A stretch of 64,000 nucleotides of DNA from Cyanophora paradoxa CCMP329 (Eukaryota > Plantae > Glaucophyta), in NCBI GenBank assembly GCA_004431415.1, contig QPMI01000224.1:62001-126000 (forward strand), written 5' to 3'. The position numbers and the translations under genes were made by a program. This document shows positions 1-61,762 of this stretch, piece after piece (position 1 is the first letter of the stretch; each line of letters opens with the position of its first letter). The notes under the pieces were generated by a model that made no database searches, was not told the origin of the DNA, and saw only the letters and a program-made list of their open reading frames with translations.

Positions 1-3000
1 CACACTCCGAACCTTCCGCCTGCTTTTTATTCCATTTCACTTTCCGTGCCTGGTGCTACCTGGCCGTCTTTCGGTGTTGTTCTCGAGCTGGCAGGTACGT
101 GAGCGCGCACCCAACATCCGGGCATCCGTGAGTCCAATAACCGCATCGCCCAGAACCATCGACTATCGTCGGCGCAGTTCCCTTGATTGCAGTGGAGTCC
201 GACTTGATTCTGATCCGCACTGAAGGTCCATTGTTTCCCAAGGAAGGTCATACCCATCGCTCTTGGTCATCGGGCGTCGCTGTGGCCGCAGCTCCAGTTC
301 TGACACTGGAACGCTTGGCGAGAATGACGTTCAGCATCAACGACATTTACGGCGATATGCAGGTCATCCCTCAAGCGCGCGTGTTCGGCGTCCAACCTCG
401 AGTGGGATCTGGGAGTGGTGGAACGGTCGTCACCGTGTTTGGCGAGAATATTTCTCGTCTTCCTTCGCCTCGTTGCCGTTTCCATGCTAGGTTCTGGGTA
501 GCTGCGGTCTGGCACACGGCTGGGAACATCTCGTGCTCATCTCCTGCACTCGGGGTTTCGTCCACAACAAGCTATGTGGATGTCACCAATGGTGGGGACT
601 TCGCACCATCTTCGGCCAGCTTTAACGTTCCTTCCCCTATTACGATCGTTTCGGTGTCCACTTTAGAGGGCCTCCCTTCACGATCCTCGGCAGTGTTCAC
701 TGCCCGCGGAGTCTCCTTGCCCGCGTCGATTGCCTGTGTCATCGCGGGCATACCGTTCCCAGCCGGCCATGTTGCCCCCAACTCGTTCGCTTGTCTGCTT
801 CATAACCAGTTAATGGGCTTCGCGCCATTGGGGATTTCCAGTGAAAAAGCTATCTTCAGCTACGACGAAGGCTTGCAAGTGTCCATTACCAGTGCGCTTA
901 TGCGGCAGCCTTTCTAAATGCGGTGTTTGTGTCCTTGACGCTTGCCGCAGAGGATCCAACTCCATCAAAGGCTCTGATCCCTCCGTTCATTGACCAAACA
1001 GATGGCGGGATCTTCAGCATTTCTGGAGGTGACCTGTTGAGTCTGGGCGAGAAAAGCCGATGCGCACTGTCGGATGGAAGAATGCTTGATGGGCGCGTAT
1101 TGTCGTCTGGGTATCTTCTATGCGATGCTGCCGGTCCGTCAACTGAGGTAACTTCCGTGGTTCTGAAGTCGAACACCTGGTTTTCAACCAACCTTCCTTT
1201 GTCTGGCAAAGGTTGGTCGATTCAGGTTTCCACTTTTCCTTGCTTGCGCTCACCGTCGCTCAGTGCGGCCCGGGCTTGGCGCTGTGGAGCCCTCAGTATC
1301 CAGTGAAGAAGGCGGTGTGGCCATCTTCGTCCAGCTTTCGACACCGATGTTGGAATCGGACGGAAGCCGTTGCTTCTTTGGCCTTAAAATCTGGGTGCTG
1401 GCTACTGTGTCAGCATCGGGATTGTCGTGCATTTTCCCTGCGATGCGCCCTGGCTCTGTGCTCCTGACTTTGTCCGTCGACGGCACCTGGCATGTTGACG
1501 CTTATCAAGTAATACATGCACTTGGTGCACAGTTTTCCTTATTGCAGCTCTATGCTGTCTGTGCGCTGACCTTTTGTTTAGCGCCCATTACTCGCACGTG
1601 GGCAAGTATGCTAACCGGATCTACTGCTGGCGGGAGCCTCGTCATTTTCCCCGTCGTTCAGACATCACCTCAAACTTTACTGGGTGTTCAATGTGAAATC
1701 GATGTGACCCCCGTGCCGCATGTTTACATGTCTGCGGACCTTGTCGGTTGTGTCATCCCGCCTCGTAGGCAGGCTGTGTACTCACTGGCACTCTCCCACG
1801 GCTCAAAAGCATCGCCATCCACCTCGTTTACTTTCTCAGGTATTCAATATTCTTCGCAGCTGTAAGCTGACACAGCAACCTTCAGTGACATTCCGTGCAG
1901 TGCCCCCATCTCCGGAAGGCCTTGCACTTCCGCAATTGAACCCTCTCGTCGTTTCGGCGCTGGCCATTTTGACTGGCAAACACATCCCATCTGATGTCTC
2001 TGCAGCCGTTGGCGAGTCGATGATTGCAGCGAGTAGTTGTCCGTCCAGTGCTTTTTGTGTTTTTGAGCTGCCTGCTGCATGGCGCGGGGTCGGCATCTCA
2101 GCCGGCGCTGTCGCCATCGGCAGCGCTGAAGCTACTGCATCCGGTAAGCTTACGCGGTTTGAGCAGTCATTCATCGTGAAATTTCCAATGGCTGTGCGCA
2201 GAACCCAGCGAGCTAAGCCGCATCACTCCTGTGTCTGCTTCCGAGTATGGTGGCACTCCCATCACGCTTTACGGGAAGCAACTGGGGGCAGGAATTTGCA
2301 GATTTTCGTCTGTATATGTAGCGAGCATCACCCGTGGGTCCGACTCTGTCGTCTGTGTGACCCCATCGGCTCTTGGTGCACGGGATTTCGTGTCAGTGTC
2401 AGGTGACGGCAGCAGTTTCCCTGCATTCCGCCTCTCCTTACCGCGAACACGTCCGCATCTTTTTTTTTGCTGCCATGCATCCTGCCAGCTCCACGCTGAC
2501 TCCATTATGCACAGAACAACCGATCATCCGAAATGCGCTTCCTGTTGAAGCGAGTTCAATTGGCGGCATCAGCATCGTGATCGTAGCTCGAGATGCCTGG
2601 AATGCTCAATCTTGCGTCTTCGACGCAGATTCTTCTACTGCTGCTGTCCACATTTCCTCATTCATGGTTGCTTGCATCCTCCCGTCGATGTCGCCGGGCT
2701 TCGTTTCCACGCACCTTGCATTGTCAGATGCAGCGAGATCAGCAACGAGCACGGTGATCAGTATTGCAGGTGCACTAGCCTATGACACGAAGTGTATGCA
2801 ATCGCCTAATGAGAGTGCCCAGATGATGTGCTGCTCTCCCGCTCTGTTCCGAGGAGGCTACCAATCAGTTCGGATTCCGTTATTCAAATCTCTGGAAGGA
2901 ACCTGGTTGGAATCCTAATGGTGCGAAACACCGACACGCGTTTGCCACTGGCGCACAAGTCGTCGGCGTTGTCCTTGGTCATAGCCGCCGTGTCGTTTGA

Positions 3001-6000
3001 AGGTCGCCATCTTTTCTCTGTCTGTCGCAGCGACTCTGACTGCGCACCCCAACCTATTGTGTTGGACGCCTATGGTTTGTGTTTTTCGGGATTCTTTTCC
3101 ATGCGACGCTGTTCTCTTAGTGAATTTCAGGTCAAGTTAGTGTATCTAGCATCCGTCAAGAAGACGCTTCGTCAACTGTCTTCATCGAGGGCGCTGGGTT
3201 TACAGATCGGGCCTGGTGCCGACACAACTTCAGAACCGTTATTGCCTCCGAAATTATCGGCAGCAGTCTGCTTCGTTGTGCACTCTCATCCCACGCTAAA
3301 CTCGAAGCCAGTGTTGAGGTTTCTGGCAATGGTCAAGATTACGTCTTGGGGCCCAGCGTCCTGCTGACGAGCACTGTTATCGACACCGATGAAACAACTA
3401 TCGAAAGTGGATTTTCGATTTCTGCCGCATCGAATATCCTGGCTTCAAGGGTCGTACCAATCTTCGGTCCAAGCTTTGGTGGCACCCTGGTCATGATATC
3501 CGCCTCGAGCTTAGTTGGACCTGAAATTGCATGCCGTCTTAATGAACTGCCCGGATTCGCATCATTTGTATCTACCGCCTACTCAGTGTGCGAAGTTCCA
3601 TCGACCATGCTGCGCCCAGGCGAACATGAAATTGCTCTATCTGTGTCATCTGGCCATTTATCCTCTGTTGTGCGTGGGGCATTCGTTATGACCGAGGAGC
3701 TCGCGGTTCGTACGATTCAACCGCTGGCCATCCCCGCAATCGGTGGCGCTGCAGTCCAGCTCACACTGGAGAGTATCGCAAGGAGAGATCTTGCTTTCTG
3801 CCGCTTCGGACGGGTCATCCTTTTGGCGCTCACTGCGTTTGAACACCGGATTGTGTGCACGGCGCCGGCTTCAATTGCTCGTCGGCAGTTACTGGTTGAC
3901 AGCTCCGTGAACGGGGTCGATTTCGTCTCTGGAGAAACCGTGCTCTCTGTTTATGGTGGGCTTCGTCTGCAACAAAAGTTTTTCTTCGTGGTCTCTTTTG
4001 AAATTTTGCGCAGATTTCACCTTCGAGCAATCGGCTATGGCCACCACGTTAGCTTCGGACAGCGTCGATGGCATCCCGCTGGCATCAGAAGTATCCTGCG
4101 TGTTCGGAGTTGAAAACACGATGGCTCTTATCGCCAGCTCGCGTTTGGTGCTCTGTAGCCGGCCACAGGGCGCCATTGGATTCCTTCCTGTGGCAGTGAC
4201 GGTGAATGGAGCCTCCTTCCTTACCACCGCGACCTATTCGACCTTTGGTACGTTTTCCCTGACCTGGATGTCGGCGTGCTTTCTCTTACAATGCGTTGCA
4301 GCACCGATACTCGGCGCGAGCATTTCGCCAGCAATTGCACCGCTTCTGGAGCCGATATTGGTCACAGTCGCAGGCCAGAATTTCGCCTCTGGTGATACCT
4401 GTCTGTTCTCGGGCAAGTTCACGCCGGCAGCTCTGCAACTCTCGTCGACCATGCTGGTCTGCGAGATTTTCGCAGAGGAGCAGAGCTCCGCCCATATCAT
4501 CGTTCAGCGGCCTGATAGCATGGGCATTATCGTTTCTACGCCTGTTCAAGTCCCCGGTACATATGACGTGGTCCCCAGGATCGATTTAAGCGCTGACATG
4601 TGGCCTTTTTCTTCAGCACGACCTGTGGGGCTAGCATCGGAACTGCGAGCAAGCAGCGAAGTGGGAGCATCGCGTCTCTCTCTGACGGGGTTGAACGCCG
4701 TTTGGCGCGCTGGCTTCTGTCGGTTCGGCTCCGTGTATGTGGCCGCGACCGAGGATTCTAGCGAATTAATTTGCAGAACTCCGGCTCTCCGCCCGACTAC
4801 CGGAGATAGTCTCGCAGTGGAAGCCCGAGTGGGCGGGGGGACGTACGTCTACTCCAGCTTGCGGGTGGTTGCCGAAGCGAAGAACCGTATCGTCCTGCTG
4901 GAACCTTCATATTTGACTACGGCTTCACCCAATCGTGTTTTGCTTGCATCTTCGGAGACCTCTGCGGCGCCCGAGACGTGCTTCCTTAACCGCGTGGGCT
5001 ATCCTGCCACTCGGCTTGGAAAACTAGCGATGTGTACCATCCATTCCGCCGAGCCGGGATTTGCGGCTGTTTCGTTGACTGCAAACGATTTCCCTGGAGT
5101 TGCAGAACCAGCAATGATTCCCGTGTTGGGTACCTTCCCCTTCTCCCATTCGAAACTTTTGCAGCAGCTAAAAATGTATGGTTCAGATAATATGCTCACG
5201 TCAGTTTCGTCACCTGGAGTCGTTGACAATCAGCCCGCTCTCGTCCTCTTGTCTGGAGTCAATCTACATCCTCTCCCTACCCCTTCCGACTTCGTTGTCG
5301 CCTATCGGTCACTGTCAACATGCATCGCGATTCTTGAGATTTTCATGCCTTCGTCAAAGAACGTCCACCTCTCTGACGAGTACTCTAAGTCTAAGCTGCA
5401 TATTTCGATCAGCGGTACTTGATCTAATTTTCCCTCCCTTCAGTCAATCTTTCAATCACTTTCGCCCCCAGATTTCCCTTCACCAATTCTTCCTGATCAT
5501 GTTGGGGCGGAAAGCGGTGGAAGTCATATCCGCCTAGTGACGAAGGCGGCTGATTCCCTTGAAATGAGCTGCAGCTTCGGAGGCAAAGTTCTCGTGAAGA
5601 CGAACCCTAGCGAATTGTCAACCGAATGCATTAGCCCCGCTCGGTCTCGGGGAGATGCCATTGTGGATTTGCTCGTAGACGGGACGGACTCTTCGCGAGC
5701 GACACTCAGATACACGGTGACGGGTACGCATTCATGTGCAATTCTCATACGACGTGCTTAGATCCGAAGTAGGCGATCCCGTGCTGGCACGGTTTTCCCC
5801 GGCTCTCTTGCCGTCAGGCACAAGGATGCTGGTCCGCTTCCTTGGTCAATTGCCCACGGGAGAGAGCGAGTGCATCTTTGGGATTTCGCCCACCGCTTCG
5901 CTTGCCTTCAATGTTGGCTCCCTCAATCAATGCAGAACACCTCATCTGCAGGCAGGTTTTGTCAGTGTATCGCTTGCCATCTCGGGACACGTGTTCTCGT

Positions 6001-9000
6001 TCTCCGAACAGCTGTCCGTGTCGGAAGCCCCTTCTCTGTCATCTGCAACGCCGTCATCGACGTTTCTCCTCGTGCCATATATCATTGCCGTCGACGGTGT
6101 GAACTTCGGGGGTTTCTCTTCGATTCGGGACTCCTGCTCGTGGCAAGGAGAGCGCTTCTTCTTCCGCGGGCTCTCAACTGGCATGGGACTTTGTGAAGTT
6201 TCTTCCGCCAGCGAAAGCGTGTGCGCGGATCTTTCAGTTGGCGGATCAAGCGAATTCGACAGCGACGCCAGCACTGCTTTTTGCTCCGAGAGTTCGCCAT
6301 TTTGCGAGTTTTGTCCTCTTCATGGAGGAGCTCAGTCGAGTGTTATTGTGCGCAGGTGCACGTCAGGCCGAAGTCGTGCTTCCAACATCTCTGCCAACTG
6401 TGGGCGGGAGTGTCATCGAGGTCCTGTCGCTGTTGAAAAACGGCTTTTGCCGATTCTCCCGTGTCGTTGTCCGCACCGTTTCGGGAGATGCGACAAACGA
6501 CTTCGCATGCATTTCTCCAACGCTCGCCTCTCAGTCGATATCTGTCACGGCAGCCGAGCTGTTCGATTTCTCGTTAGCAGAACCGCAGACACGTCCAGTC
6601 GCACTCGAGTGCTTCGCATCCCTGTCCCATGCTGTGCAGAGTGGACGCGGCTCCACCCACGTAGTGGCATCGTACCAGTCGAGCGTGCTTGGTCATCCGA
6701 CACTGCTCGTTGGACAGAAAAGCATATCACTTCATGGTATCGTGGGGGGCGGAAAAGCAGCGGAAGTCGATATCGTTTACCCAGCAGGTTTCTATGACGC
6801 ACGATTGACGATTGGTGGTGAGCTTTGTGCGACACAGCCCTCTTCTCTCGAGTTCAAGCGTAAGTTGGTTCTGATATTTGCTTCTGTGTTTCGGGTTGTT
6901 TTAACGTCGACTGCACAGCGGGTCCTCTTGAGCTCTCACTTACTCCAGCTTTATTGGAGGAAGGAACAGCCAATCTGGTCGTGCTGCAGATGAATAGTCT
7001 AAGCCATGATGCCCAGTGCTTGGTCAATGGCTTGGCTGCGCCTGGAAAATACCTTTCGAGCACTCGCTTTTTGTGTGAGGCTCGGCTCTTCGAGCTCGCC
7101 GGAGGCTACGACATTGGTGTTTCGTCTTCTTCTGCGAAGTCTCGGCTCAGCGGGAAATGTTCGTTGGTCTTTTCCGCATGTCTCCACATCTGAGCTGTTC
7201 TGCAGATCGCGATGCTTCCGACCTTTCCACCCTTCCAACTGCTGCTGAAGTTGGGGGAACGGTCTACGCGAGCTCACCTGGTGTTCTTGTCTGGCGTTTT
7301 GGTGCTGTTATCATCCGCACATATCAGGCCGGGCGGACAAGGGAGGGCAGAGCGCCAGCGCGGCATCTAGGCAGCACGACTACAGAGACATCCGCAGATG
7401 GCGTTCATTTCACTCCCGGTCCCGCCATTGTTTATAGTGGCACGTCATTTTTTTGCCGTCATTTCTTATTGTAGACACACTCCTACTCCGCTAACTGCAC
7501 CGGCCCGTAGCCCCTGGATTCATCATTGCCGCCGAGAACCCAATAGCTCCCTCCTGGGCGACGCACACAGTCACTGTCGTGTTTGCTGGCGTCCCGTCCA
7601 CGTGCGCTGTCGGAGAGGCGCTAGCGGATATGACGGTGGAGAGTGCCAGCCGAGCATCTTGTGTCGTTCCTCGAGCTGTTCCGGGATATTCTTCGCTTGA
7701 TTCTGTTCCGTTCACTGGCAACCACGGTTTGGGGCAGCTGCAGATCGCTGTACTAGGTGAGATACGTGTCGCATTGTCGTTTCGTACTTCTCTCATCATC
7801 AGCTCCTACTTTGCAGATCCGTCATCCCCTGTCGTGCTGTATCCAAAGACTCGTCACACTTTGCCCGGATCTGTGATCCATATCGTCGGCGCCAACGTGG
7901 GAGCTTCGTCGTTCGGGCCAATCATGTGCGAGTTCGGAACCGACAGAGTGCTGGCGCGTGCACTTTCGACATACGCGATGCTCTGTGAGGCCCCTGCCAC
8001 GAACCAAGATCCGGATATGTATATCATCCGGGCTCGAAATGAGATCATCTCGTCCTTTGACGCGATCATTAACGGTGCTCTTGCTGGGTTGAATGCGAGA
8101 GAAAGCGCTCACTCTTGCCTCAGATATTTCGTCGCCGGAACAGGTGGATCCAAACTTTGCGCCCTTGACCGGCGGCACAAATATTCAGATCGTCTCGGCT
8201 TTGCTGCAAAATGCCCCTGTTTCGAGGGCGCGTTTTGGTCGTTTCAGTGTGGCCTGTTTGGCGTCTCTTTCCGGCAAAGGATGCACATTTGTTTCTCCGG
8301 CTGTTCGTGCAGGTTCTTTCGGCCTGGATCTTGCTTCCAATGGACTTGACTTCCTTCTGGGCTCCGCTTCCATTGTTGTCGCGGATGATGCTATCGTTCT
8401 CCTTGGCGCCCCAGTGATCATCAAGGAACGGAATTTAGTCACGCTTGGTTATGCAAACCAGTTGTGGCGTCCTTCATGGCGTTGCCGAATCAGCTTACAA
8501 GTACAAGAAGCTCCTCCTGCAGGGAATGAGCTCGTCTCTTGCTCTCTTCCACGTCACACGGATGGCTTCTGTTCGATCGAATTTGGCGTTTCCGGGGAAT
8601 CGTTTGAAATTGCTTTCGATGCGTTCAGCGTTGAAGGTTCGGAGTGCTGTTCGATGCTGCCTAGACTCTTGAATCTGACTCGCGTGTTCGTTCACAGACT
8701 CGGCATCAGTCATGCTTGCAATGCCTGAACGTGTTGTGCACGCGTCCACAGCTGTCCTGCACGTGTTTGGACGTCATCACCATGCAGCGTCAAGATGTGC
8801 TTTGAGCGGGCACTCCGGTTTCGCCCACTTTGTTTCGTCGGCGCTGATCCTCTGCGAGACACCAATCTTATCAGATGTCATTGAATCGTCTGTGGAGTTG
8901 ACCTCTGGGTCCTCTACTCCTATCTTTGTCTCCATTTCAGGTGCTCACACTAAATAGTTCTTTGGGGGCTGTCGCTACAATTCTGATCACACACCTCTTT

Positions 9001-12000
9001 CCCACAGCTATCTCGGCCCCACAAAGTGTTACGCCATCAACCATGCGAGCCGAAGGTGGCACTCTTTTGACGATAAGCACTTTCGGTGCCCGAGAGGACG
9101 GAGCCCGCTGGTGTATGTTCAACACCAAAGTTGTTGTACTGGCTCGGAATGGGCCAGCGACCAACGTTGAGTGCGTCAGTCCGGCGTTGACCACATCTGC
9201 GGATTCTATAATGCTTTCTCTGTCAAACGACGGCGCGAATTTCGAACCTTCCTCGGTCCGAATTGCTGTCGTCGGTGCGCAACGTCACTTTTCAGTGGCT
9301 TGCGGCTTAGTGACTCATGTGCTTCTGCAGATCCGTCTCGAGCTACTTTCGCTGTTGATCCCAACAGCTCTGATGTCGTCATCACAACCGCTGGCGTCCC
9401 AGCAGATGTCGAGGGCCAGTGCTGGTTCAGCTCGTCTGTTAACTCGGCTCCCGCAATCAGAGTTTCTTCTGGCGTCTTCTCTTGCACTCTTCCGTCGACT
9501 CGCGCTGGCTTCAATGTGCTTCAGTTTGGCATAGACTACGACCCCATTGCCTCTTCAGCGATATTCACCACAGGTACCTGCATAATTCGCTCCCGCTTGG
9601 CTTGGTCATCTGTCATTTCTCAAAGCTTCGCTTGAGCAGAGACATCATCCAAGGCGGCAATCATCCCAGGGCAGCACACTAGCAGCTCTTCGTTCTTTGT
9701 CGTGGTTGGCGAAAACGTCGCTCTTCACGACGACCTGGATTGCTCGCTACAAGGATCGGGCATTGGTCGCCTTATCACGCGTTCAACTGGATTCGGTGTG
9801 TGCGACCATGCTTTCGTCGCTGAGGCTGGCAGCCGGCGAGTCTCGTCCAGAACATGGGGCGATTTGCAGTTGTTCGCGGATTTTCTTGGTGCGTGTCGCA
9901 GCGGAAGTTTTTGCGTAAGATCTTATCTGAATTTCTCCCAGATGAAATTGAGGTGTCGGCTATCTCGCCCAGCATTATTGCTTCGGTTGGTGGGACATCG
10001 GTTTCGCTCATTGGTTTGTCGCTCGGTTCTGCTACCGTTATGTCATGCCGGTGGAATACCAAGGTCGTCACTGTTACAACTGTTGCAACGATGACGTCTG
10101 CCTCGTGTATTAGCCCAGCATTGCCAAAGGGAGAGACCGTGCCGCTGGAAATTGCTGCATTCGCAAATTCATTTGTTGCAACAGACCTGTCTGCCTACCT
10201 TCGAGGTGAGCTGAGATTCCACGACTGTGACCGCGACGTAGATGTTCCAGAAATCGGATTTCGTTCTCACAATAGATTTCCCCGCAGACTTCCCAGTCGC
10301 TCTTGCTGCGTGGCCTCGCACTAGCGCTTCCTCGAGTCTGGTGGTTGCACGTCCGAGCATCGCACTCGGACGGGCAAGCGTAGAGCAAGTTTTCATCCCC
10401 GGCGGTTCTGCTGGGTTCATCGATCTGTCCGTTTTCGGATTCATATCCAGTCCTGGCTTGGAGCTATCTGCAGTGGCTTCGGCGTCCATCGGCTTGGTCA
10501 CTCCCCGCCGTGCACCCTCCATGTTCGCAAGTCTTGCACACCTTAGCGGCAAAAACATTCAACAAGATACTTTGTTGGTTGTTGCCGGTCACGGCGCTGG
10601 CATCTTTTCTACCGCTTTCGCTGTTGTGGAGATAAATCCCGCAGGCATGCTCGGCACACGACTTGCTTTGCTCTTCGCCGCAGATGGTACAGTAATAGCC
10701 TCTTTGTATACTTTCCGGTTGTTGCGCTGTTCTGACTGTCAGCACAGAACGAAATCCAACTAGTGTAGACAGTGTAAGCCCGTTGCGTTTGGCTTACAGG
10801 GGTGGCGGCATTGTTTCTGTTGCCGGCTCCGGTCTTCACGCAGTCACCTCCTGCATCTTCAAGAGAGTGTATACATCGATTCATGATTCATCAGAGGCGG
10901 CGGTGGCGTGCAGTGCTCCTTCCCTTCGACCTGGGGTTGTACAGGCTGCGCTTGCATCTGGCGGGCTTGATGCGTTCGGTGTTGCTGCAGTCACCGTCCA
11001 AGGTAAGTTGCACACGTTAAAGTCAGTACGGGTGTAACCTGGCCACGCAGAATCACCTCTGGCGAGCCACGTTGTACAGCCACGAGTCGTTTCGGATGGC
11101 CTTTCCTACGTGGTTGCTGCTTCCAAGAAGACGAGCGAGATCCTCAGCTGCCGCTTCGATGTGCTGCTGGGGGCCGTCGATTTCAACGATGGAAGAGTTA
11201 TGCGATGCTCACCATCCTCTCCAGTCTCACCAGGGTTTGTTGCCTTCGAGTTTGGGGCGGTTTCAGAGGTTTTGTCGTTTGCGTCCACTCTGCTTGAAGC
11301 GAAAGGTTAGTGCGAGTCACATATTCGCGTTCCTCAGTTGTGTTTAGCGTCTAAATACCGCGAATTTGCAGAACGTATGCAACTATCTGCTGTAACACCC
11401 AGTTACCTGCCATCTTTTATCAGTTCCATCTCCGTGGCGTTTGGCAGGAATCTCGTAGACGGAAACACCATTTGCAGCTTCTCTGGCGAGGACATCCCTG
11501 CCCGGGTTCTCTCCACTGCGGTCGCAGTTTGTCCTAGCTGTGCTTGGGGTGCTCAGAACGACAGCTCTGCAGATGCTGTAGCCTTGAGACCAGCCGAAAC
11601 CAAACGTTCGACACGTACGATCGGCTTGGAGCGCATCCCGCCGCCAGATCTCCGCGGGCTTTCGCCCGCACAAGCAGACGTCTACGGCGGCACCCGTGTA
11701 ACGATTGTCGCCGCCATGTCAACGTTCTCATCCTACTGCCTCTTCTGGAATAAAGTTGTCGTCGCTGCAGAATATTGGGGTGAAACTGCAACGATTTGCC
11801 GAAACCCGGCCTTTCTTGTAGCTAACGTTTCCGTCGCACTCGGCGGAAATCGGTTTGATTTTGTTTCTGTGCTGGGTCTCACCATCGAGATCGTCAATGG
11901 TACCCTAAATCCGCACATTTGGCAATCCTGTTACCTTGCTAATGGACTGCGCCCAGCCTCGTCGATTTCATCCCAAACAGATGTCGTGCAAACCGCCTTG

Positions 12001-33000: not shown

Positions 33001-36000
33001 GCCACAGAGCGAGCTCGGCTTCTGCGCGGTCTCGGTCACTCCGAATCGTGCAGGCACCGGGGTTGTGGCAAGCACGCAGGATGAGTTCTTTGGTGCGTCG
33101 GCGTATGTCGCTCAATGCTTGTTCTCGTCCTGACTTGCGCCTGGCAGCGGAGCCCGCGCCCTCGTCGTTGTTCCCGCGAGTTGGCTCGGGCGGTACTGCA
33201 ACGCTGATCGCGGTGGCTGGATCAAACTTCGCCACAACGAACCGGCTCTTCAGCTGCGGCGCTGGAAGGCACCGCAGCAGCGGGCGGCTCCTATCGTCAT
33301 CGCTGGGGTTGTGCGAGCTTCCGCAACTTGCAGAAGTTGGCGTCGCGTCGTTCGACGTGTCTCTGAACGGCCGAGATTACACCAACTCTGCGTTGCAGTT
33401 CAAGACGCAAGGTACACGCGATTCTCAACTATAGAGAGATCCGCTAATGCACGGTCGCAGCCATGGTCACTTTTACGCGGGCTGTCACTCGTCTTGGGTC
33501 CGAGGATGGCGGGACGGTCACTGTTCTTGCCGGCCTCAACCTCCCCAGGTCCACGCTCTTAACGTGCAGAGTCGGCAAGGTGGAGCTTCACGCGGAGTGG
33601 ATATCCGACTCGTCCGCCGAATGCCAGACACCTGCCAACGTTCCGCGAGCAGCTCTAGTTTCGTTGTCGGGCGATCGTGCTGACTTCCAGTATGGCGTCG
33701 ATCGCTTCACTTATATCGGTATGCTCGTTCGCTTGCTGACTCCCAAACCGCTCTAACTGGCTCCACAGCCCGCCCGACCGTCTCGGCAATCACGCCCAGC
33801 CAGGGCGTGGACACGAGCGAGAGCATGGTGTTCGTTCACGGAAGCAATTTCGTGAACACGTCCGGCATCGTTTGCCGCTTTGGCGCCAAGCGCTCGCGCG
33901 GCTTCTTCCTGTCGCCCACCTCCGTCATGTGCCTCGCGCCTCTGCACACCGAGGGGCGCGTGCAGTTGGAGGTCTCTTTCAACGGCCAAGACTTCACTTA
34001 CAATCGCCTCCTGTACTCGTTCGGTGCGCCACTGGCGCCCGAGCCCCCGTCTCGTCTGCTCGACTCACCGCGCGTTGCAGTCAAATGCCGCGGAGGGACG
34101 TTCTGCAGCAACCAGGCGCAGTACGCGTGTCCGAAGGGGTCGTACTGCTCAGGCGTCGGCAACTTCAACTTCACGCAATGTCCGCCGGGGACATATCAGC
34201 GTACGCGCCGTGCGCTGTTCTTGCGCTGAACGCGGACCTGACGATACTCTGCAGCTCTGGCTGGCCAGGAGACGTGTCTCCCGTGCCCGTCGGGCAACGT
34301 CTGCCCGAGCTTCGGAATGTCGCGCCCGCTGCCCTGTCCGCCAGGCTACATCTGCAACACAACGGGCCAGGCGTATCCGAATCAGATCTGCCCGCCCGGC
34401 TCGGTTTGCCCTGGCGGCCAGCGGCGCCTCGAACGCAACGACGACCCGACCATTCTCGATGACCGGCCCAGTGTGTGTCCTCCAGGCTACTACTGCCAGG
34501 CCGGCGTCGGTTCGTCATCTCTCGTCTTCCCTGCAGGTACTTTCTGTTTTGCTGATACGGCCTTGGGCAGCTTCGTTCGTGTCGATTCCTGGCAACTTCA
34601 CGACTCCTCAGCCTTGCTACCCCGGCTTCTTCTGCGAGAGCGGCTCGGAGACGCCGCAGGGCAGCGGTCCATGCCCGACAGGCTACTACTGCCCTGCAAT
34701 CTTCCCCGTGCCCGTTCTTCCTTGCCCTCCAGGCTCCTACTGCCCGGAAACCGGCAATCTCTCCCCCAAGCCGTGCACCCCTGGCTTCTTCCAAGATCAG
34801 TACGCATCGTCCGAGTGCAAGGCCTGCCCCGAGGGATACATCTGGTGCGAGCGCCGCCCTTGCGCGTCCGGCGGCTCTGACTGCGCGCCTGCAGCCCTGG
34901 GTTCAGCCGTATCATGCCGGAGCTCTGCCCTCCAGGCCAGATCTGCGAGAACCAGATGCGTGCTGCTCCGGACAGCCAGTGCACGCCGGGCTATTACTGT
35001 CCCGCCGGCGTCGAGACGTCAAATCTCCTCTCGGCATCGCCTTTCAAACCGCGCCCGTGCCCCAACGCGACGTATTGCCTCGCCGGGACACGTGCGTGCC
35101 ATGGGGCCCCGCGCCCGTGCGCCCGCGCAGCCCCTCATGCAGGGTCCTCGGGCAGGGTACCTCTCCATCCGCCCTGGCGACGCGTTCGGGCCTCAGGAGT
35201 GCGTGGCCGGCACGTACTGCTTGATCGCCACGCCGTCGCCGTTCGGCACGGCCCGCTGTCCGCCCGGCTACTACTGCCCACGCGGCGTCTCCGCGCCCAT
35301 CGCCGCGCCGCTCGGACAGTACGCATTTGGTCTCGGCAATTCGTTCACGATCAAGTGCCTTCCTGGAACCTACGCCCGTGCGCACGAGAGGGCCGTGCTG
35401 GCGCGCGCCGCCCCTCGCTGACGGGGCGCCTGCAGCGGTCATCGCGACGGAGACGTGCCTGGCGTGCCCCGCCGGCTTCGAGTGCGCGGCGGAGGGGACG
35501 TCGGTTCCGACCATCTGCCGCCCCGGGACGTACCGGGCGCGGGGCGTCAACTCGGCGCAGGGGGCCGGCCCGCAGCCGGCGGACCTGCAGGGGACCGTCC
35601 TCACGGTGACGTGCCAGCTGTGCCCGCAGGGCGCCTACTCGGGTGTCGAGGGCCTGCAGGACATCTCGATGTGCGAGCCATGCCCCGCCGGCCGCGTCTG
35701 CAAGGTCGAGGGCATGAAGTTCGTCAACGAGAGCGCCGAGTGCCCCGAGGGCTTCGTGTGCGGGCCCGGGACGACGACCTCGACGATGTTCGCGACCAAG
35801 TGCCCGGCCGGCTTCTTCTGCGACTACGGGACGTCGCCGGACACGCAGTTCGACAACGACTGCCCCGCCGGCTACTTCTGCCCCGAGGGCACCGCCGCCT
35901 CCTCCAGGACCTCCTACACCTGCCTCGAGAAGTGCGCCCCGCGCGCCCCTCCCGCTCCCGCCCCGGCGCCCCCTCACGCCGCCCCGCAGCTACTACTGCC

Positions 36001-39000
36001 CGGCCCGCACGGCCGGCTACCTGCAGCCGGACGGGACGTGGGACCTGCAGCTCGTGCCTGTGCCAGGCTCGTCGGACTTCGTGCGGCTCTTCGCGACGCG
36101 CCTCAACCAGTTCCGCACGGGCTACTCGTCGCAGGTCTTCGCGCGCCTCGTGCCGACGGCGGTGGACCCGAGCGAGACGAGCGCCGCCGAGATGTTCTCC
36201 ATCGCCTCGGCCTCCTCGCGCTTCTCGCGCTACACGCCCCTCGTCCGGCGGCGCGCCATTCTCCAGAGCCTCGCCGTCGTCGACCCGACCTTCCAGGCCG
36301 GCGACGAGGTGAGCCTGAAGTGCCCGGAGGGGACGACGAGCCGGCCGCGCATGTCCTCTATCGACGACTGCGTCAAGGACCAGGGGGCCGGCTCCCTCGT
36401 CTCCATCAACCCGCTCCTCTCCGCCTACCACCTCGACACGACGACGGGCCGCACGCGCGCCATGCAGCCGCACTTCGTCTTCCCGGGCAACGTCTCGTTG
36501 AAGGCGAGCGGGATCAGCTGGCCCCGCGACAACATCACCGTCTTCAAGGTCCCGGCGACGACCATCGTGCGCATCGCGTGGAACCTCACGGCCATCAACC
36601 GCCGCGAGCCGCTCCTCCAGTACGGCGAGCACTTCCGCATCTCCGTCTTCAACTCAACCCTCGTGCGCCGCACCCGTCCCCCCCCACCCCCCACCCTCCT
36701 TCCCCCTCCTGCTGACTTTTTTGCGTGGCAGGATCCGGCGACGGACCCGGACAACGTGCTCTTCGGGCTGGTAATGCGGGAGGCGCCGACGGAGATGCCG
36801 TACGCGCTCTCGACGATGTCGAAGCCGTCGCCAGCGCAGCCGGAGGTGCCGAACGACTACCTCTCGGTGCTGTACTTCGAGGTCGTCGCGCAGAAGGACG
36901 TCTACCTCGCCGTCACCGTCGACATCCTCCACGGGCGCTACGTCGACCTCCGCGCCGAGTTCCGCCGCACGATGACCCTGCAGTTCTCGCGCGCGAGCCG
37001 CAACGCCGACCCCAAGACCCCGAAGTCCTTCTACGCCGTCGTCACGAACAAGAAGTCGCCGGCCGACGTGGCCATCGGCTTCAACTTCATGGACGTCAAG
37101 CGGGACGTCAACGAGGGCGCGGCGCAGGCGAGCTGGGCCCGCGACAACGACATCCTCATCTCCTTCCTCGGCGTCTCCAACGTGACCCTGGCGCCCGACC
37201 GGCAGCCGAGCCTCGTCGAGAACGCGACCCTCACCGACGTCGAGAACGCCGCCAAGGCGAACCGGCAGTACTGGCGCGACACCGACCCGCGCGTGCAGGC
37301 ATTCCCCTTCATCCCGTACCTCTCCCGCTGCGACGGCTTCGGCGCCTACGTCAGCATCGCGTCGGTCCTCGAGCACCCGAACTGCACCCTCGTCGACCCG
37401 GCCTCGAGCGCCTTCCAGTCGGTCAGCCAGTACAACCCACTGGGGGGGAACCCCTACTCGGACAGCTGCGTGATCACGACGCGGTGCGAGTACGAGGAGC
37501 GCGTCTTCAGCAGCAACGCGCAGTCGGTGCTGGGGGCGCTGAGGTACTGGTACGCGGCGGACTCGGACACGGTGCTCTTCTCGTTCTCGCGGGACTCGGC
37601 CCTCTACTCGGAGTTCGTTGCGTGGAACGCGTCGGCGGCCGCCATCGCCGACGTCGAGCTCGTCGACGTCCTCGTCCGGCGCCCGCCCGGCAAGGACACC
37701 ACCCTCATCCCCCGCACCGTCGAGCTCCAGATCTACTACGGCCAGTACGACGAGTACACCAAGCGCATCGTGCGGGCCTTCATGCGCTTCGACGACTTCG
37801 ACAACGTGGACGGGGCGGGGGACCTGAGCACCAAGTACCAGCTGATCATCTCCTTCCAGCCGTACGGGTGGAAGGACCTGATGGACGCCTTCGCGCTCGA
37901 CCTGCCCGTCTACCTCATCATCTTCCTCGTCGTCAACTCCCTCGGCATCCTCATCTGCGTGGGCATCTGGGGGGTGCACCGGGTGGTGACGCGCGTGCGG
38001 AACCCCCCCAAGTTCCGCTTCTTCGAGTACATCCGCGTGATGACGACGGCCCCCTTCAAGGGCGTCCTCATGACCGCCTTCGTCCTCTTCGACATCTTCG
38101 GCTTCCTCTACGGCGTCCTCATCGCCTGGAACCCCTTCGCCGACGAGAAGGGCGACTACCAGAACAACCAGCCCCTCAACGACGAGCTGTCCGCCCCGCC
38201 CCGCCCTGCCCCGCCCCCGCCCCGCCCCGCGCCCTCCCTGACGCCGGCGGGTGTGCAGGGTGCGGCAGTACCAGTACGGGCGCTTCGGGCTCGTCCTGCT
38301 CCTCTGCTCGAGCTACATGATCTTCTACATCTCGACGATCATGATCCCCGACCGCAAGGAGCGCAAGATGGGCGACGCGCCGGGCGACAAGGCCGGCAAG
38401 GACGCGCCGGCGCAGCCGCGCAACAAGAAGATCCACCTCTCGCCGGTGGTGCTGCAGCGCTCGCAGCTCATCTTCGCGAGCTACGGCGGCGTCGTCCTCT
38501 TCGTCTTCCTGATGGAGCTGACGTACTCGTCGGTCTGGTCCTCGAACTCGCAGATCTTCAACGTGCTGGCGCGTGTCGGCCAGTTCGTCCTCACCGCCTT
38601 CCTCAAGCGCACCCTCGTGCACGAGCTCTCCTACGGGCCCGTCCTCATCTCCATGGACCTCATCATCGCCATCGGCAACATGAGCGCGCCCACCTTCACA
38701 CAGTTCCTCATCTCCTTCTTCCAGGACATCCTCATCCAGGTCTTCATCCGCCTCTACGTCCGCAAGGTCCAGAACTACATCCGCTCCCGCATCCCCGCCC
38801 TGCGGAAGTGGCTCCTGCGCAAGATCGTCGCCATGCGGGCGGACCGGGCCGGGGAGGGCAAGAGCGGGAAGGCGGGGCAGGGGGCGGGCAAGTCGTGGCG
38901 CGTGATGCAGTCGCTCGCCAAGTTCAAGGCCCTCACCCGCGTCGACGCCCCCGACGACGACGACGACGACAAGGGTCCGCCCGCCCCCGCCCCCGCCCCC

Positions 39001-42000
39001 GCCCCCTGGCCCCTGGCCGCTGGCCCCGCCCCGCTTTTCGCTGAGGGGGGCGGGGGCGGGGGCAGACGAGTCGGTGGACCGGGTGATCAGCGTGCTGTCG
39101 AACTACTCGCTGGGGGTGGTGGCGCTGCTGCTGACGCCCCTCTTCCTGGGCGTCATCTGGCAGTTCGACGACCTCCTCCAGCTCTCCCGCCTCTACTCCA
39201 TCAAGAAGCGCGACCTCCGCTTCTACCTCCTCCACTTCGCCGTCTTCGTCTTCGGCCGCATGGCCATGGACGTCTTCATCGCCCAGACCCAGGAGGTCTT
39301 CATCGGGCTGAAGCTCTTCGAGTACCTGAAGTACGCGGAGCACCGCTTCCGCACCCGCACCTCCATCTGGAAGGGCTTCGAGTCGACCTTCGACGAGACC
39401 ATCGAGGAGGGCCTCCGCACCCTCGACCAGCTCTGCTTCTCCTCCCAGTACTACCTCCTCATCTGCTTCGGCGCCTGCTCCGTCATCTTCTGCACCTACG
39501 GCGTCGAGATCATGATCCGCTGGGAGTACAACATGTTCTCGTGCGTGCCAGCCGCCCCGCCCGCCCGCCGGCTCGCTCGCGTCTGCCGCTCGCGCCGCCT
39601 GAGGCGCCGGCAGGGACCCGATGCTGATCCCGATCATGGGGCTGGCGCTGCTCTTCTGCAAGCTCTCCCGCCGCGTGCTCTTCTTCGTGGTGGGCAAGAT
39701 CCAGCTCTGGCGCCTCCACGACCGGCGCAAGCGGGCCGTGGTGGAGGAGTCGGGGGCCCCGAAAGAGGAGGGCGGCGCCACTCGGCGCATGTTCCAGCTT
39801 CCCGGCCTCGGCGGCAAGGGCCCCGGCTACGAGGGCGCCGAGGGCGGCTCCTCCATCGACCCCGCCCGCCTCGAGACCGACGAGTTCAAGTGCGCCTCCC
39901 CGCCCCCGGTCCCGCCCGCCCCGCCCTGCCGGCGCCTCACTGGTGGCGGCAGGAGCGAGTTCCTGGAGAAGAACCGGCCGTGGATCCTGGAGCGCCTGGG
40001 CTCGGCCCTCTCGCCGCGCACGCGCTCGCGGCTGCAGGGCCGCTCGGGCGAGGGCGCCGGGGAGGGCGACGAGGAGGAGGGGGCGACGGACCGGAAGGGC
40101 GCCCTCGCCCGCATGTCCTCCTTCGCCCGCGGCGGCCTCGCGAAGATGCGCGACTCCTTCCGCGCCTCCTTCGGCGGCAAGGGCGCCCCGGCCTCGTCCG
40201 CCGCAGCGGCCGCGGCGGACGCGGCGGACGCCGCCCGGTCGCCCACGCAGCGGCAGGTCAGCACCGGGCCGCCGGCCATCATCGGCCCGATCGGCCTCGG
40301 GAGCCGCACGGCGCTCCCGCCGTTCCCGCGCCCGATGGGCCGCGGCACGCTGGCATCGCTGCGGCCGCCGGGCGCCACGCGCATGCTGGGGCGGACGGTG
40401 TCGGAGATCAGCAGCAGCAGCGAGGGGAGCGGGGATGAGCGCGGGGTGAGCCACGAGGCGATCGACGCGGCGCTGGTGGAGGAGTGGCCGGTGCGGGAGC
40501 CCGGGCGCAAGACGCGGGTGGTGGCGATGAAGCTCCTGCGGGCCATCCGCGCGCACATCCGCCTCCAGGAGCAGGTCGCCGAGCAGCAGCAGCACCGCGC
40601 CGCCTCGCTGCAGAGCTCCCTGCCGCGCGACCACCGCCGCGCCGGCCACGGGGACGTCTCGTCCGACGAGGAGAGCGTGGGGAGCGGGTCGAGCGAGGGG
40701 ACGGCGGTGCGGGCGCGCAACGAGTGGCCCGTCGCCGCGATCGACGAGAAGACGCGGACGGTGATGTTCAAGCTCCTCTACGCCGTGCGCGTGCAGCTCG
40801 GCCAGCGCGCCGCCGCCGACGAGCGCGACTCGGACCTCGAGTCCATCTCCTCCTCGGCCTCGGCGATGCACAAGCGGGCGCGCGGCGCGGCGGCGGGGGC
40901 GGCCCCGCGGGCGGCCCCCGTGCGGGACGACATCTCGGAGGACGCGTCGGTGGACGAGCGCGGGCCCGACGCCGCGCCCCGCACCTGGGGCCTCGAGGGG
41001 CCCATCGCCCCCCAGACTCGCGTGCGCCCCGCCCCGCCCCCGCCCCGCCCGCCCCGCCCCGCCCCCCGCCCCGCCCCGCTCCGTCCCCGACCGCCGCGCA
41101 GACGATCGCCTTCAAGTGGCTCGCGATCGCGCGCACGAGCCTGGCCAACGTGTCGGGGTGGAGCCCGGGGCGCCCCGGAGCCGCCGAGCAGCAGCTCGGA
41201 CGACTCGGACGGGGGCGCCGGCCCGCCGCCGGCCCCCGAGCCCCGCAGCCGGCCCTCCATCTCCGACGACAGCGGCAGCGACGGCGGCGGCGCAGGCGGC
41301 GCCAGAACCGCCGCCGGCGCCGACCCCCGCGGCCGCTCGACCCGCGGCGGCGGCAACATCATCGGCTTCAGGTCCCTGCGCCCGTTCCGCCCCGCGCGCC
41401 CGCCGCTCACGCGCCGCCGCCGCGCGCAGGCCGATGGCTGCCGGCCCGATGGAGGCGGGGCGCAGCGTGGCGGCCGACTTCACGGACGGGGAGCCGGCGG
41501 AGGAGCGGCCGGCCTCGCGGCAGCGCCAGGCGATCGTGCGGCAGCCGCCGGCCCGCATGATGATGCCGGCCGCCCTCGCCGGCCGCCCCAGCGCCCTCGC
41601 CCCGACGAGGCGCCCCGGGCCGCGCTCCAGCGGCGCCGCCCGAGCAGCGGCCTCGTGACGGCCGGCCCGACAGCGACGCTCGGCGCCCTCGTCTTCCGCG
41701 GCGCTGACGACGGCTTCCCCGCCGAGCCGCCGGCCCCGCCACCTGCGCCTCCGCCGGCCCCGGCGCGCCCCGCGGCGCCGGTCTCGGACGACAGCGGGAG
41801 CGAGAGCAACGGGGCCGAGTTCCCCGAGATCGGGCCGGCCCCGCGCGCCCCGCCACCCTCGGCGCCCGCTCGGTCCCCCACGGGCGCGCCGTGGAGCCCC
41901 GCCGCCCCGCCGCCGCCCCGCCATTGCCGGTCGCGCCGGCCCCGCCGGCCCCGCCGGGCGCCGGTGAGGAGGACTCGGGGCCGGCGTGCTGCCTTCGCAG

Positions 42001-42569
42001 AGCCGGAGCGCGAGCAGCGGCGGGAGCGGGAGCGGGCGCGGGGAGGGTGGAGGCGGTGCGCTGAGGAGCGGCCTGCCGGCCTTCGCGGTGCCCGTCGAGG
42101 ACGCCGTCGCCCCGGCCGGCTCGACGCTCGCCCAGCACGAGCCGGCGGCCGCGCCCCGTCCCGCCAGCACCCCGCCATCGCCCCGCCCCCGCCAGCGGCG
42201 CTTCCCTCGCTCCCGACACCCACGGCGGCGGCAGCGCAGCCGGCCGGCCCGAGCGCGAGCTCGGAGCCGGCCGGCAGCCCATCGGCGGCCTTTGCGGCTG
42301 TCGCGGTGACCCCGCGCCAGACTGCGATGGCCCCGCGCGCAGCAAGCTTCCAGCTGGGCAGCAGCCTGCCCTCGGCGCCGCAGGTGCCCGCCGGCGGGCC
42401 GCTCCGCCGCGGCTCGGACGCCCATCAGGCGATGCCGCCGCTGCCGATGCCGCCGGCGGACGGTGGCGCGGGGCGGCACCCGGCGCCGCGGCGCATGTTC
42501 GCTGAGCGTGCGCCGCCGGCATCGCGGCTGCACGCAGCGCCGCCGCCGCCGCCGGAGCCCTCAGCGCCG

Positions 42570-42601
<32 letters not shown>

Positions 42602-43121
42602 CGGGCTGCCGGGGGGCCTGGCGAGCGACCACGAGGAGCTGCCCGACGCCCGCGGCCCACAGCAGCGGGCCCCCGAGGAGCACCCCACACGCTGGGCCGG
42701 TCCGCCTCCGCCCGAGCCCCGAACCCCCTACCTCTCACTGCGCGCTGACGGCCCCGGCGCAGCGCCCTCGCGGGTGGCGAAGCGGGTGGTGGAGATCAGC
42801 AGCGACGAAGGGACGAGCGAGGAGGAGGGGGCGAGGGCGGTGCGGCCGTACGGGTCGGCCTCGTCGGGCTCGAGCATGAGCGTCGACTCGGACGTCGAGG
42901 CCGACAACGCCGTCGTGCCCCTCCGCCGCGCCCCGGCCCCCGCCGCGTCGCGCCCCGCCCCGCCCCCGCCCCCCGTCCCCGCTCCCGCCTTCGTCCGCAC
43001 GGCCACGGTGAGCGGCCAGATCAGCGATGACAGCGGCAGCGACGCGGACGCGGACAACGACAGCGAGCCTGACGCGGCGCCTGCCCGCCGCCATCACTCC
43101 AAGCACGCCCGCCGCGGCTAG
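1..43121 (+). CDS. Giant multi-exon cell-surface protein (5' end outside window): ~115 IPT/TIG domains + Cys-rich CPxGxYC repeats + multi-pass TM module + Pro/Ser/acidic tail
   Basis: The + strand ORF fragments repeatedly give IPT motifs (P-x-x-G-x-x-x-GG-T-x-V-T-V-x-G, CxF, CxxP, SxNGxDF) and are joined by short GT-AG introns. Phase-1 introns link the last IPT (33769-34023, ...EVSFNGQDFTYNRLLYSF) to the first Cys repeat (V-KCRGGTFC at 34081). There is no intergenic-like break before the stop TAG at 43119-43121. Confidence 0.8.
350..34023 (+). repeat. Tandem array of IPT/TIG domains (protein-level repeat, ~38-39 triads of ~0.85 kb)
   Basis: Three closing motifs recur in fixed order: NG(V/L/A/F)DF (e.g. 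~3910, ~8339, ~17801, ~19657, ~25002, ~29105, ~31817), (P/A/S)GF-x-x-V, and (L)S(S/T)xxxxCE. Nucleotide-level identity between units is not evident. Confidence 0.8.
34081..36380 (+). repeat. Cysteine-rich repeats (ephrin-receptor-like / GCC2-GCC3 type, CPxG(Y/F)(Y/F)C)
   Basis: CPKGSYC, CPPGYIC, CPPGYYC, CYPGFFC, CPTGYYC, CPAGFEC, CPEGFVC, CPAGFFC, CPAGYFC and others across spliced exons. Confidence 0.85.
37900..39720 (+). other. Multi-pass transmembrane module of the giant protein (~10-11 hydrophobic segments)
   Basis: LPVYLIIFLVVNSLGILICVGIW, VLMTAFVLFDIFGFLYGVLIAW, FGLVLLLCSSYMIFYI, LIFASYGGVVLFVFLM, YSLGVVALLLTPLFLGVIW, FYLLHFAVFVF, YYLLICFGACSVIFC, MLIPIMGLALLF. Confidence 0.75.
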
Positions 43122-43519
43122 CCGCGCATCCCGGCGCATTCCCGCCCCCGGATAAGGAGTTTTCCCCCTTCTTTTTAGGCGCCCTCTCCCTCGGGGGTGC
43201 ACAACTTCATCTTCCTACACGGAAGTACTTATTTTACGACAAAGAAAAGTAAACCTGTAGAGTAGATAGAACAGCCAGCAAGTAGGTATTGAAGACAGAA
43301 AAGAGTGTGGTTAGATATTGGGACCATGTATGTACCGTAGTACCATAGTTTGAATAATGGAATTGAACGAACACATATTTGACCGCAGAGTGACAGCCGT
43401 GGCCACGTGTGCACGGTGTGCATGTGTTAGCCCTGAAGCATTCGTAGAATGCATATGACTAGTCTGACTCAGTGACTCGCGACACACTGTGACACAAGGA
43501 GTACCATATATATGCAAAG

Positions 43520-44520
43520 CCGGTGTGCCCGGGGCCCGCTCTAGATCTAGATCTAGATCTGGGCCCCGCCCCTTGAATCACTGAGTCATTTTAATTTAAA
43601 TTACGTATACAGCTTTAAGGCTTAAAGGCTTCAAATGTTGAACTTCAAGGCTTTGAAATCAATATATATAATATCTATAAAGTTAAAGCTTGAAAAGCCG
43701 CTGAGCCTCGGAGGCTTCGAATTCAAGATCGATATCGATATCGGGCCACTGGGCCACGGGTTCTAGGCTCTAGATCTTATCATGATCTGATTCGCCGAGT
43801 CGATCATGATCATCATGGCATGCATATGCCAGGACAAAATTCAGTCATGACGAGAAGGGCCGGGCCGGGGCTCTTACTACGTAGACGGTACTGCCCTAGT
43901 GCTAGCTATATAGCCACCGTGGCACTCGATGACTGGGCTGCTGCCAGGCTGCCAGTAGGGCCGTGCGGTTCGACGGTCCACAGGATCCGGAGTACTAGTT
44001 GCCCTGCCAGGCCCTGAGGCTGCCAGGCTGGTCCACAGGAGTACTAGTCCGGTCCCAGCATGGCCATATTCATGATTTATATGCATGGCCCAGTTGCATG
44101 CGCAGTGCCGCCGTTCGCGTGCCGCAGTGCCCTGTGTCCGGATCCGAGTGGCCATGGCAGCTGCAGAGAAATCTGGACGATCATGATCATGATCAAGATC
44201 TTGACTCACTTGTACTACGGAACCGATTCTCAGAGTCTAGATCCTGATCATGAGCTCGAGCTCAAGTGGGCGTCACACGGTGGGCGTCACACGGCGTTTT
44301 TATTTCAAGTTTAATTTCCCCGGGCATGCATGCATGCATGCGCAGCGGGGCCGTGATCGACCCCCGGGCCGGGCCCGGGGGGCGGGCCGAGCTCGAGAGC
44401 TAGTCGGACGGCTAGCCCTGACACCCCGATCGCGAGGCCCCGGGGCCCGCGGCCGCTGGGCGGCCTAAAGTCGCTGCAGCGGGACCAGTCCACGTCACGC
44501 ACATGATCATGATCTCCCGA
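43520..44520. repeat. Intergenic spacer saturated with short palindromes and their tandem expansions
   Basis: (CTAGAT)x3 at 43541-43560, GATCGATATCGATATCG ~43727, GATCATGATCATGATC ~44179, GAGCTCGAGCTC ~44252, (GCAT)x4 ~44324, and tandem GTGGGCGTCACACG x2 at ~44266-44293. Confidence 0.7.
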
Positions 44521-44741
44521 TCCGGCGCTTCCCGTTCCCCGCTACCTGCGGATTGAAACTCCGGTTCTTCGGAAATCAAACAGCAGTGAACATGAAACCC
44601 TGTGGCCTGCTGCGACAACCCGCTGAACTGGCGAACGACCTATCTGACTACCTGGGGCGAGGACAAAAAGAGCGACACTGTGAAAGGGGTGGATTGACAA
44701 ATGAAGCTGCAAAGCTGCATCGAGGCCCGCGCCGCGACCCT

Positions 44742-46650: not shown

Positions 46651-46757
46651 GTTCTGGTACTGACCCCCCCGTCGTACTGTACCCCTACGTGGCCCCGCCC
46701 CCGATCTCTCCTCTCGCGAGGCGATGCCTTCTCCTCAAGATCTCTCCACTCGAGGCG

Positions 46758-47422: not shown

Positions 47423-47548
47423 CCGAGCAGAGAAAGGAGGCGCTCGCCGCGCTCCGTCCCCCAGGGCATCGTCTCTTGCCCGCGCCCGGCCTCCCCGCTC
47501 GCACGCCCCCGCAAGGCAACGGCGCGTCGGACGAGCTCATTGTTGGCC

Positions 47549-48373: not shown

Positions 48374-48449
48374 GCGGGGCACAGTTCGCGGACGTAGCTA
48401 TAGAGCGCGCGCGCGCGACAATGAGGACTTTCGTCGTCAACTAGCTCCG

Positions 48450-61204: not shown

Positions 61205-61762
<558 letters not shown>

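What the first reader, a model, noticed from the sequence alone, without database searches (positions are those of the whole stretch)
1..43121. Titin-scale cell-surface protein: >100 IPT domains anchored to a Cys-rich stalk and a polytopic membrane module
Seen: a continuous spliced gene of about 12,000 aa within the window, still open at the 5' edge, with about 115 IPT/TIG domains, Cys repeats, ~10-11 TM segments and a cytoplasmic tail. Established: plexins, MET and fibrocystin carry only a few to about a dozen IPT domains. Inference: at roughly 4 nm per Ig-like domain this could be a 0.4-0.5 micrometre extracellular filament coupled to a membrane sensor or anchor. Candidate roles are flagellar hair, tether, adhesin or mechanosensor. 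Automatic annotation would probably split it into many genes. This is the best candidate for an undescribed system here.
Basis: partly seen in the sequence, partly recalled or inferred. Interest (0 to 1): 0.9.

Follow-up and report, generated by a model that had tools for sequence, protein, structure and literature searches.

The report
Giant IPT-repeat membrane-anchored surface filament
A single gene of a swimming alga (probably Cyanophora) encodes a protein of at least 11,900 amino acids, a chain of about 113 antibody-like domains long enough to form a 0.4-micrometre hair on the cell surface, fixed to an unnamed multi-pass membrane module shared with many other protists, and genes of this kind may be the unknown source of an orphan fibre recently seen by cryo-EM in pond water.

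Summary
Confirmed, with corrections. A stop-free spliced frame runs from position 1 to 41,149 (94 short introns, 11,891 aa, 5' end outside the window): about 113 IPT/TIG domains in an A-B-C triad, ~19 Cys repeats, an unnamed ectodomain, 11 predicted TM helices and a cytoplasmic tail. All 82 array introns are phase 1. RNA contigs from two studies (15.7 and 18.3 kb) splice the array into the Cys stalk exactly as modelled; 1-22 kb is not RNA-checked, and the tail past 41,150 is unresolved. The gene is not unique: at least 365 relatives (oomycetes, ochrophytes, a jakobid, an ancyromonad) share the membrane module, most of those examined with the same domain order (up to ~60 IPT), but none has a described function in the papers searched. 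The membrane module has no Pfam or clear PDB match; a colinear TMEM16/OSCA resemblance is weak and did not strengthen on retest. The array fits TLP-IPT, an orphan >200-IPT glycofibril whose gene is unknown. Best reading: a membrane-anchored surface filament with a transducing base. The scan noted similar IPT cassettes on another piece of this genome.

The parts
1..34023 (+). Array of about 113 IPT/TIG domains (~87 aa each, pairwise identity at most 38%, Ser+Thr 20%), A-B-C triad super-repeat, mostly one domain per phase-1/phase-1 exon; open at the 5' edge, no start or signal peptide in the window
   Evidence: RNA joints for 29,301-34,023
34024..34080 (+). Phase-1 intron joining the last IPT domain to the first Cys repeat
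   Evidence: three RNA-like runs, absent from DNA run
34081..36086 (+). Cys-rich stalk, about 550 aa, 52 Cys, about 19 CxxG-aromatic-C repeats (GCC2/GCC3, ephrin-receptor-like type, sub-threshold Pfam)
   Evidence: homologs 30-45% identical
36087..37913 (+). Membrane-proximal ectodomain, about 590 aa, no Pfam family, conserved in the family
37914..39700 (+). Polytopic membrane module, 11 predicted TM helices; keeps 59 of 81 family-conserved columns; no Pfam, no clear PDB fold
39953..40020 (+). Conserved juxtamembrane cytoplasmic helix (EKNRPW motif), completed by intron 39,890-39,952
40509..41149 (+). Three basic amphipathic tail repeats (near 40,509, 40,764 and 41,102); the third matches the family motif only after intron 41,022-41,101
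41150..43121 (+). Low-complexity, 80% GC 3' region; transcribed at least in part (by RNA contig length) but reading frame and true stop unresolved

Best explanation
One gene encodes a type-I-oriented surface protein. Shown: one spliced frame joins the IPT array, Cys stalk and membrane module. Inferred: a signal peptide upstream of the window sends the array outside; the ~113+ IPT domains stack as beads on a string (3.3 nm each, at least 0.37 um), stiffened by O-glycans on their Ser/Thr as in TLP-IPT; the disulfide-rich stalk and proximal ectodomain couple this hair to the 11-TM module, whose odd TM count leaves the conserved helices and repeated basic motifs in the cytoplasm. Because the membrane module and tail are far more conserved than an anchor needs, the base most likely transduces contact or drag on the hair into a signal, possibly as a remote TMEM16/OSCA/TMC-type channel or scramblase (about 0.3 on its own). 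Most likely site: flagellar or cell surface hairs.
For: Continuity. Same order in single-ORF relatives: (102 of 197 fetched proteins carry IPT, 46 have 10 or more). Complete relatives begin with hydrophobic signal-like sequences (by eye). Natural >600 nm tandem-IPT O-glycosylated fibril exists (bioRxiv 10.1101/2025.09.30.679562). Invariant polar residues in and beside TM helices. Colinear alignment of a homolog's module to TMEM16 TM1-10 and OSCA TM0-10 (OSCA topology from PMC6235563). C. paradoxa has long narrow flagellar hairs and ring-shaped flagellar membrane particles (PMC6704402). Named relatives come from lineages with flagellated stages (own knowledge for life cycles).
Confidence: 0.6

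Rival explanations
1. Passive coat, adhesin or tether: the filament adds surface area, spacing or substrate grip (gliding, attachment, grazing defence) and the TM module is a scaffold that links it to the cytoskeleton or axoneme without gating anything.
For: No clear channel fold. The Chlamydomonas PKD2-mastigoneme complex is itself read as structural (PMC10846610). Repeats are highly diverged and lack a recognisable ligand-binding tip in relatives.
Against: Strong conservation of polar intramembrane residues and cytoplasmic motifs across supergroups is more than an anchor needs.
Confidence: 0.22
2. CRMP-like contact sensor for regulated exocytosis: the Cys stalk and multi-pass core trigger mucocyst or extrusome discharge, with the IPT array as a long feeler or as discharged fibre.
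For: Cys repeats next to a polytopic core and a motif-bearing tail recall CRMPs (PMC9815656); C. paradoxa has mucocysts.
Against: CRMPs have 9 TM and an EGF-pair core and no IPT array is described; no apicomplexan or named CRMP protein among the named hits. Homology was not tested directly.
Confidence: 0.1
3. The protein is shorter than claimed: only the RNA-linked 3' part (from about 22 kb; ~40 IPT domains, ~5,500 aa, the usual family size) is the functional gene, and the 5' array is a separate, alternative or decaying unit.
For: RNA contigs reach only to about 21,978 and 24,215 by length. Relatives top out near 60 IPT slots and 7,785 aa. GC3 is 0.54 in the array against 0.96 in the module.
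Against: 1-22 kb is stop-free with the same splice signals, phase-1 introns and triad, with no in-frame break or signal peptide seen; contig ends in low-depth 3'-biased RNA are expected; low GC3 also covers the RNA-confirmed array.
Confidence: 0.08

Closest known systems
TLP-IPT glycofibril (CryoSeek, bioRxiv 10.1101/2025.09.30.679562)
   Same: Tandem IPT domains of ~86-87 aa, Ser/Thr-rich, freshwater protist origin suspected, chain far longer than any annotated receptor; authors infer a >=20,000-aa protein whose best database hit is a 1,063-aa Baffinella fragment.
   Different: TLP-IPT gene, host and anchor are unknown; its best hits are cryptophyte, this gene is probably glaucophyte; only ~113 domains are seen here (5' open) against >200; sequence identity to TLP-IPT could not be tested.
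Unnamed protist IPT-Cys-multipass family (e.g. Saprolegnia SPRG_10953, Lagenidium N0F65_006795, Chaetoceros CTEN210_17444, Andalucia ANDGO_00631)
   Same: Same domain order and homologous membrane module and tail motifs (22-29% identity); some share the lag-3 repeat signal.
   Different: Roughly twice as many IPT domains as the longest relative seen; one-domain-per-exon phase-1 structure; longer tail. No member has a described function.
Plexins, MET/RON, fibrocystin and fibrocystin-L
   Same: IPT/TIG domain class (PDB profile hits to plexin-A and MET).
   Different: They are single-pass with a few to about 14 IPT domains plus Sema/PSI or G8/PbH1 domains (own knowledge); none of these was found here.
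TMEM16/OSCA/TMC channel-scramblase superfamily
   Same: 10-11 TM helices; weak end-to-end colinear structural alignment, the extra first helix falling on OSCA TM0.
Chlamydomonas MST1 mastigoneme-PKD2-SIP complex
   Same: Extracellular glycoprotein filament with Ig-like and Cys-rich parts anchored by a multi-pass membrane protein on a flagellum.
   Different: There the filament is a polymer of separate subunits and the anchor is a TRP channel; here filament and anchor are one polypeptide with an unrelated module.
Cysteine repeat modular proteins (CRMPs) of apicomplexans and ciliates
   Same: Ephrin-receptor-like Cys repeats before a polytopic core with a cytoplasmic tail.
   Different: 9 TM, EGF-pair core, no IPT array.

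Membership tests
IPT/TIG domain (PF01833) | Pfam TIG match above the gathering score | tested here: met
   45.5, 31.2 and 22.8 bits against cut-off 20.9; plexin/MET hits
Protist IPT-Cys-multipass family (unnamed) | Homologous membrane module and proximal ectodomain | tested here: met
   365 hits, best E 2e-32; 59 of 81 conserved columns
Protist IPT-Cys-multipass family (unnamed) | Order IPT array, Cys repeats, ectodomain, TM module, EKNRPW-type helix, basic tail repeats | tested here: met
Protist IPT-Cys-multipass family (unnamed) | N-terminal signal peptide | not testable with these tools
   5' end lies outside the window; look-ups for upstream DNA failed
TLP-IPT glycofibril | More than 200 tandem IPT domains in one chain | tested here: inconclusive
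   about 113 in the window, array open at the 5' edge
TLP-IPT glycofibril | Sequence match to the TLP-IPT model or KAJ1470089.1, with conserved glycosylated Ser/Thr sites | not testable with these tools
   sequence not in the PDB copy hits or the held supplement; only bulk Ser+Thr 20% measured
Plexin / MET receptors | Sema and PSI domains, single TM helix | tested here: not met
   11 TM predicted; no Sema/PSI in exons or relatives scanned
TMEM16/OSCA/TMC superfamily | 10 or 11 TM helices in the TMEM16 topology | tested here: inconclusive
TMEM16/OSCA/TMC superfamily | Sequence-profile match (Anoctamin, RSN1_7TM, TMC families) | tested here: not met
TMEM16/OSCA/TMC superfamily | Ion conduction or lipid scrambling; dimer | not testable with these tools
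   needs experiment
CRMP | Nine TM helices with two adjacent EGF-like domains | tested here: not met
   11 helices against 9 (PMC9815656); no EGF Pfam hit
CRMP | Sequence or fold homology of the TM core | not tested

The most novel reading that the evidence does not exclude
This is the extreme member of an ancient, undescribed eukaryotic family of single-chain tethered sensors: a glycan-armoured IPT filament hundreds of nanometres long fused through a Cys stalk to a new branch of the TMEM16/OSCA/TMC superfamily, forming force-sensing surface or flagellar hairs, and this family is the genetic source of the orphan TLP-IPT fibril.
Probability: 0.22. Interest if true: 0.93.

Novelty: new variant of a known kind. 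Interest (0 to 1): 0.74.

Why it matters
It supplies an RNA-backed example of the gene type that the TLP-IPT paper inferred but could not find (a very long tandem-IPT chain hidden by short introns), and adds what the cryo-EM could not show: how such a filament is anchored. It exposes a conserved 11-TM module without a Pfam family, found in Discoba, ancyromonads, stramenopiles and probably glaucophytes, so possibly old in eukaryotes. In a culturable alga with unidentified long flagellar hairs, the link between gene, fibre and function becomes directly testable. If the module is a channel or scramblase, it is a one-chain analogue of the hair-cell tip link plus TMC.

Tried and rejected
My early note that the last IPT and first Cys repeat share an exon was wrong (RNA shows intron 34,024-34,080). 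DP introns at 226-291, 15,742, 18,297, 21,488, 22,419, 27,613 and 32,049 were dropped as unneeded or misplaced; RNA confirmed the last as false. A stop-reassigned genetic code is not needed (introns explain the stops). Pseudogene or frameshifted array: rejected, no break remains and 78 of 94 introns were required by a stop or frame change. Recent tandem expansion or assembly duplication: rejected, repeats are at most 38% identical. Uniqueness to this genome: rejected. Firm TMEM16 assignment: not accepted after the core retest. Pfam, PDB-sequence, Foldseek and Atlas searches of the module were blank. Exact look-ups and a metagenome scan for upstream DNA failed. Literature searches found no description of the family. 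The tree is the quick version and places the window's row on a long, unsure branch; no donor or order of events is claimed.

Full report
Observation. The + strand from 1 to 34 kb is a mosaic of overlapping stop-free stretches in changing frames at about 54% GC, followed by a 68-80% GC region to 43 kb. Pfam finds TIG domains above the curated cut-off in single exons, a profile of 30 single-domain exons hits plexin-A and MET IPT domains in the PDB (best E 1.9e-14), and an HMM grown from the window finds repeats about every 300 nt on + only. In the spliced model 87 repeats pass E<1e-3; their 87-aa spacing gives 112 slots, with about 1.4 more at the 5' edge. The repeats are old (at most 38% identical) and show a three-domain super-repeat (lag-3 excess 8.1 against a null s.d. 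of 1.0, 0 of 2,000 permutations), with occasional breaks, so the triad is strong but not strict.

One gene. A dynamic-programming model free to choose intron phase found a stop-free path with 88 introns, 82 in phase 1, most at domain boundaries. After inspecting the exceptions, the model has 94 introns of 44-101 nt and 11,891 aa without a stop from 1 to 41,149; all 82 array introns are phase 1 (a few of these were settled by hand with that pattern in mind). A control using splice signals only scored +166 on the real strand and -520 to -600 on the reverse complement and shuffles, which needed about 170 evenly phased introns (the signal matrices came from the model, so this is partly circular). 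Independent test: on 29,301-35,300, runs X1 and X5 (different studies) each give one contig with 15 GT-AG introns removed, X8 shows most joints, and DNA run X12 shows none. Ten of the eleven joints in the array had been predicted (one acceptor 3 nt off), one predicted intron was false, and the array-to-stalk intron 34,024-34,080 was new. The spliced distance 29,301-34,843 is 4,841 nt in both model and contig; by length the X5 contig runs from about 21,978 to beyond 41,021. A contig is not a single molecule, X12 may be the source DNA of the assembly, and 1-22 kb has no RNA check.

The 3' end. After the array come about 550 aa of Cys repeats, about 590 aa of unnamed ectodomain, and 11 predicted TM helices. 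The frame after 41,150 is unresolved; the protein is about 11,900-12,500 aa inside the window.

Relatives. The exon 36,732-38,186 finds 365 proteins. Of 197 fetched proteins, 102 carry IPT domains, 46 have ten or more, the longest about 60 slots in 7,340 aa; several show the lag-3 signal. Single-ORF relatives align colinearly from the last IPT through the membrane module, which supports the architecture without any splicing assumption. Named members come from oomycetes, diatoms, brown and pelagophyte algae, Cantina, the jakobid Andalucia and the ancyromonad Fabomonas, all as hypothetical or IPT/TIG domain proteins. A quick tree groups oomycetes and ochrophytes as expected for vertical descent; the window's row is long and unplaced. 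The organism is probably Cyanophora paradoxa: the lead is another agent's note, and high GC, short introns and run dates fit PMC6704402, but I did not verify it.

Mechanism. TLP-IPT, a pond-water fibril solved by cryo-EM, is a string of more than 200 O-glycosylated IPT domains with a 32.7 A rise, over 600 nm long; its gene is unknown and its best hit is a 10-domain Baffinella fragment (bioRxiv 10.1101/2025.09.30.679562). At that rise the in-window array spans about 0.37 um; it is 20% Ser+Thr with only 10 N-glycosylation sequons. I infer an extracellular glycofilament anchored by its own 11-TM base, N-terminus out and tail in, with the base transducing contact or drag. C. paradoxa has long narrow flagellar hairs of unknown make-up, a candidate location only. 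Rivals are a passive coat or tether, a CRMP-like exocytosis sensor, and a shorter true gene.

Limits and handling. All database searches and alignments sent to tools used single exons by reference or proteins returned by tools. The joined model was built only inside scripts from the window file, to check frame, count domains and compare with proteins already fetched; the joined database search and the fold of the window's own module were left out, so the structure results are for homologs. One search used a wrong frame and is void.

Verdict. Real, expressed at least over its 3' half, and the longest member seen of a widespread but undescribed family. New variant of a known kind (filament-bearing membrane receptor); interest 0.74, rising to about 0.93 if the module proves to be a tethered channel and the family the source of TLP-IPT.

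Noticed in passing
window 1-41,021: Within one transcription unit GC at third codon positions stays at 0.51-0.58 across the IPT array and rises to 0.96 in the membrane module; intron GC rises from 0.49 to 0.79. Unexplained.
   Followed up: partly
window 34,976-34,993 and 35,260-35,279: Another contig in both RNA run X1 and DNA run X12 shares short exact words with the Cys repeats, suggesting a second expressed Cys-repeat gene (possible paralog) elsewhere in the genome.
   Followed up: no
upstream of window position 1: The 48,743-nt DNA contig of run X12 extends about 12 kb beyond the window's 5' edge by its coordinates, so the missing part of the gene is in public data.
   Followed up: partly
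window 43,390-44,540: Intergenic DNA made of chained short palindromes, as another reader also noted.
   Followed up: no
window 59,389-59,484: Intron of the ALG3-like gene starts with a U12-type AT donor consensus and ends in AC.
   Followed up: partly
window 46,880-48,259: ORF with a weak NERD nuclease-related hit (E 0.009) and a long Glu/Arg repeat, between housekeeping genes.
   Followed up: no
window 44,500-62,000: Downstream neighbours look like ordinary housekeeping genes: a YlqF/RbgA-like GTPase (48.4-49.6 kb), CDC50 family (52.1-53.6 kb), ALG3 (58.0-59.9 kb) and histone H3 with introns (61.2-61.8 kb) (GTPase and H3 by eye).
   Followed up: no
homologs P0088, P0114, P0169, P0179 and others: Many relatives have one further IPT-like domain after the Cys repeats, and several repeat the three-domain periodicity.
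   Followed up: partly
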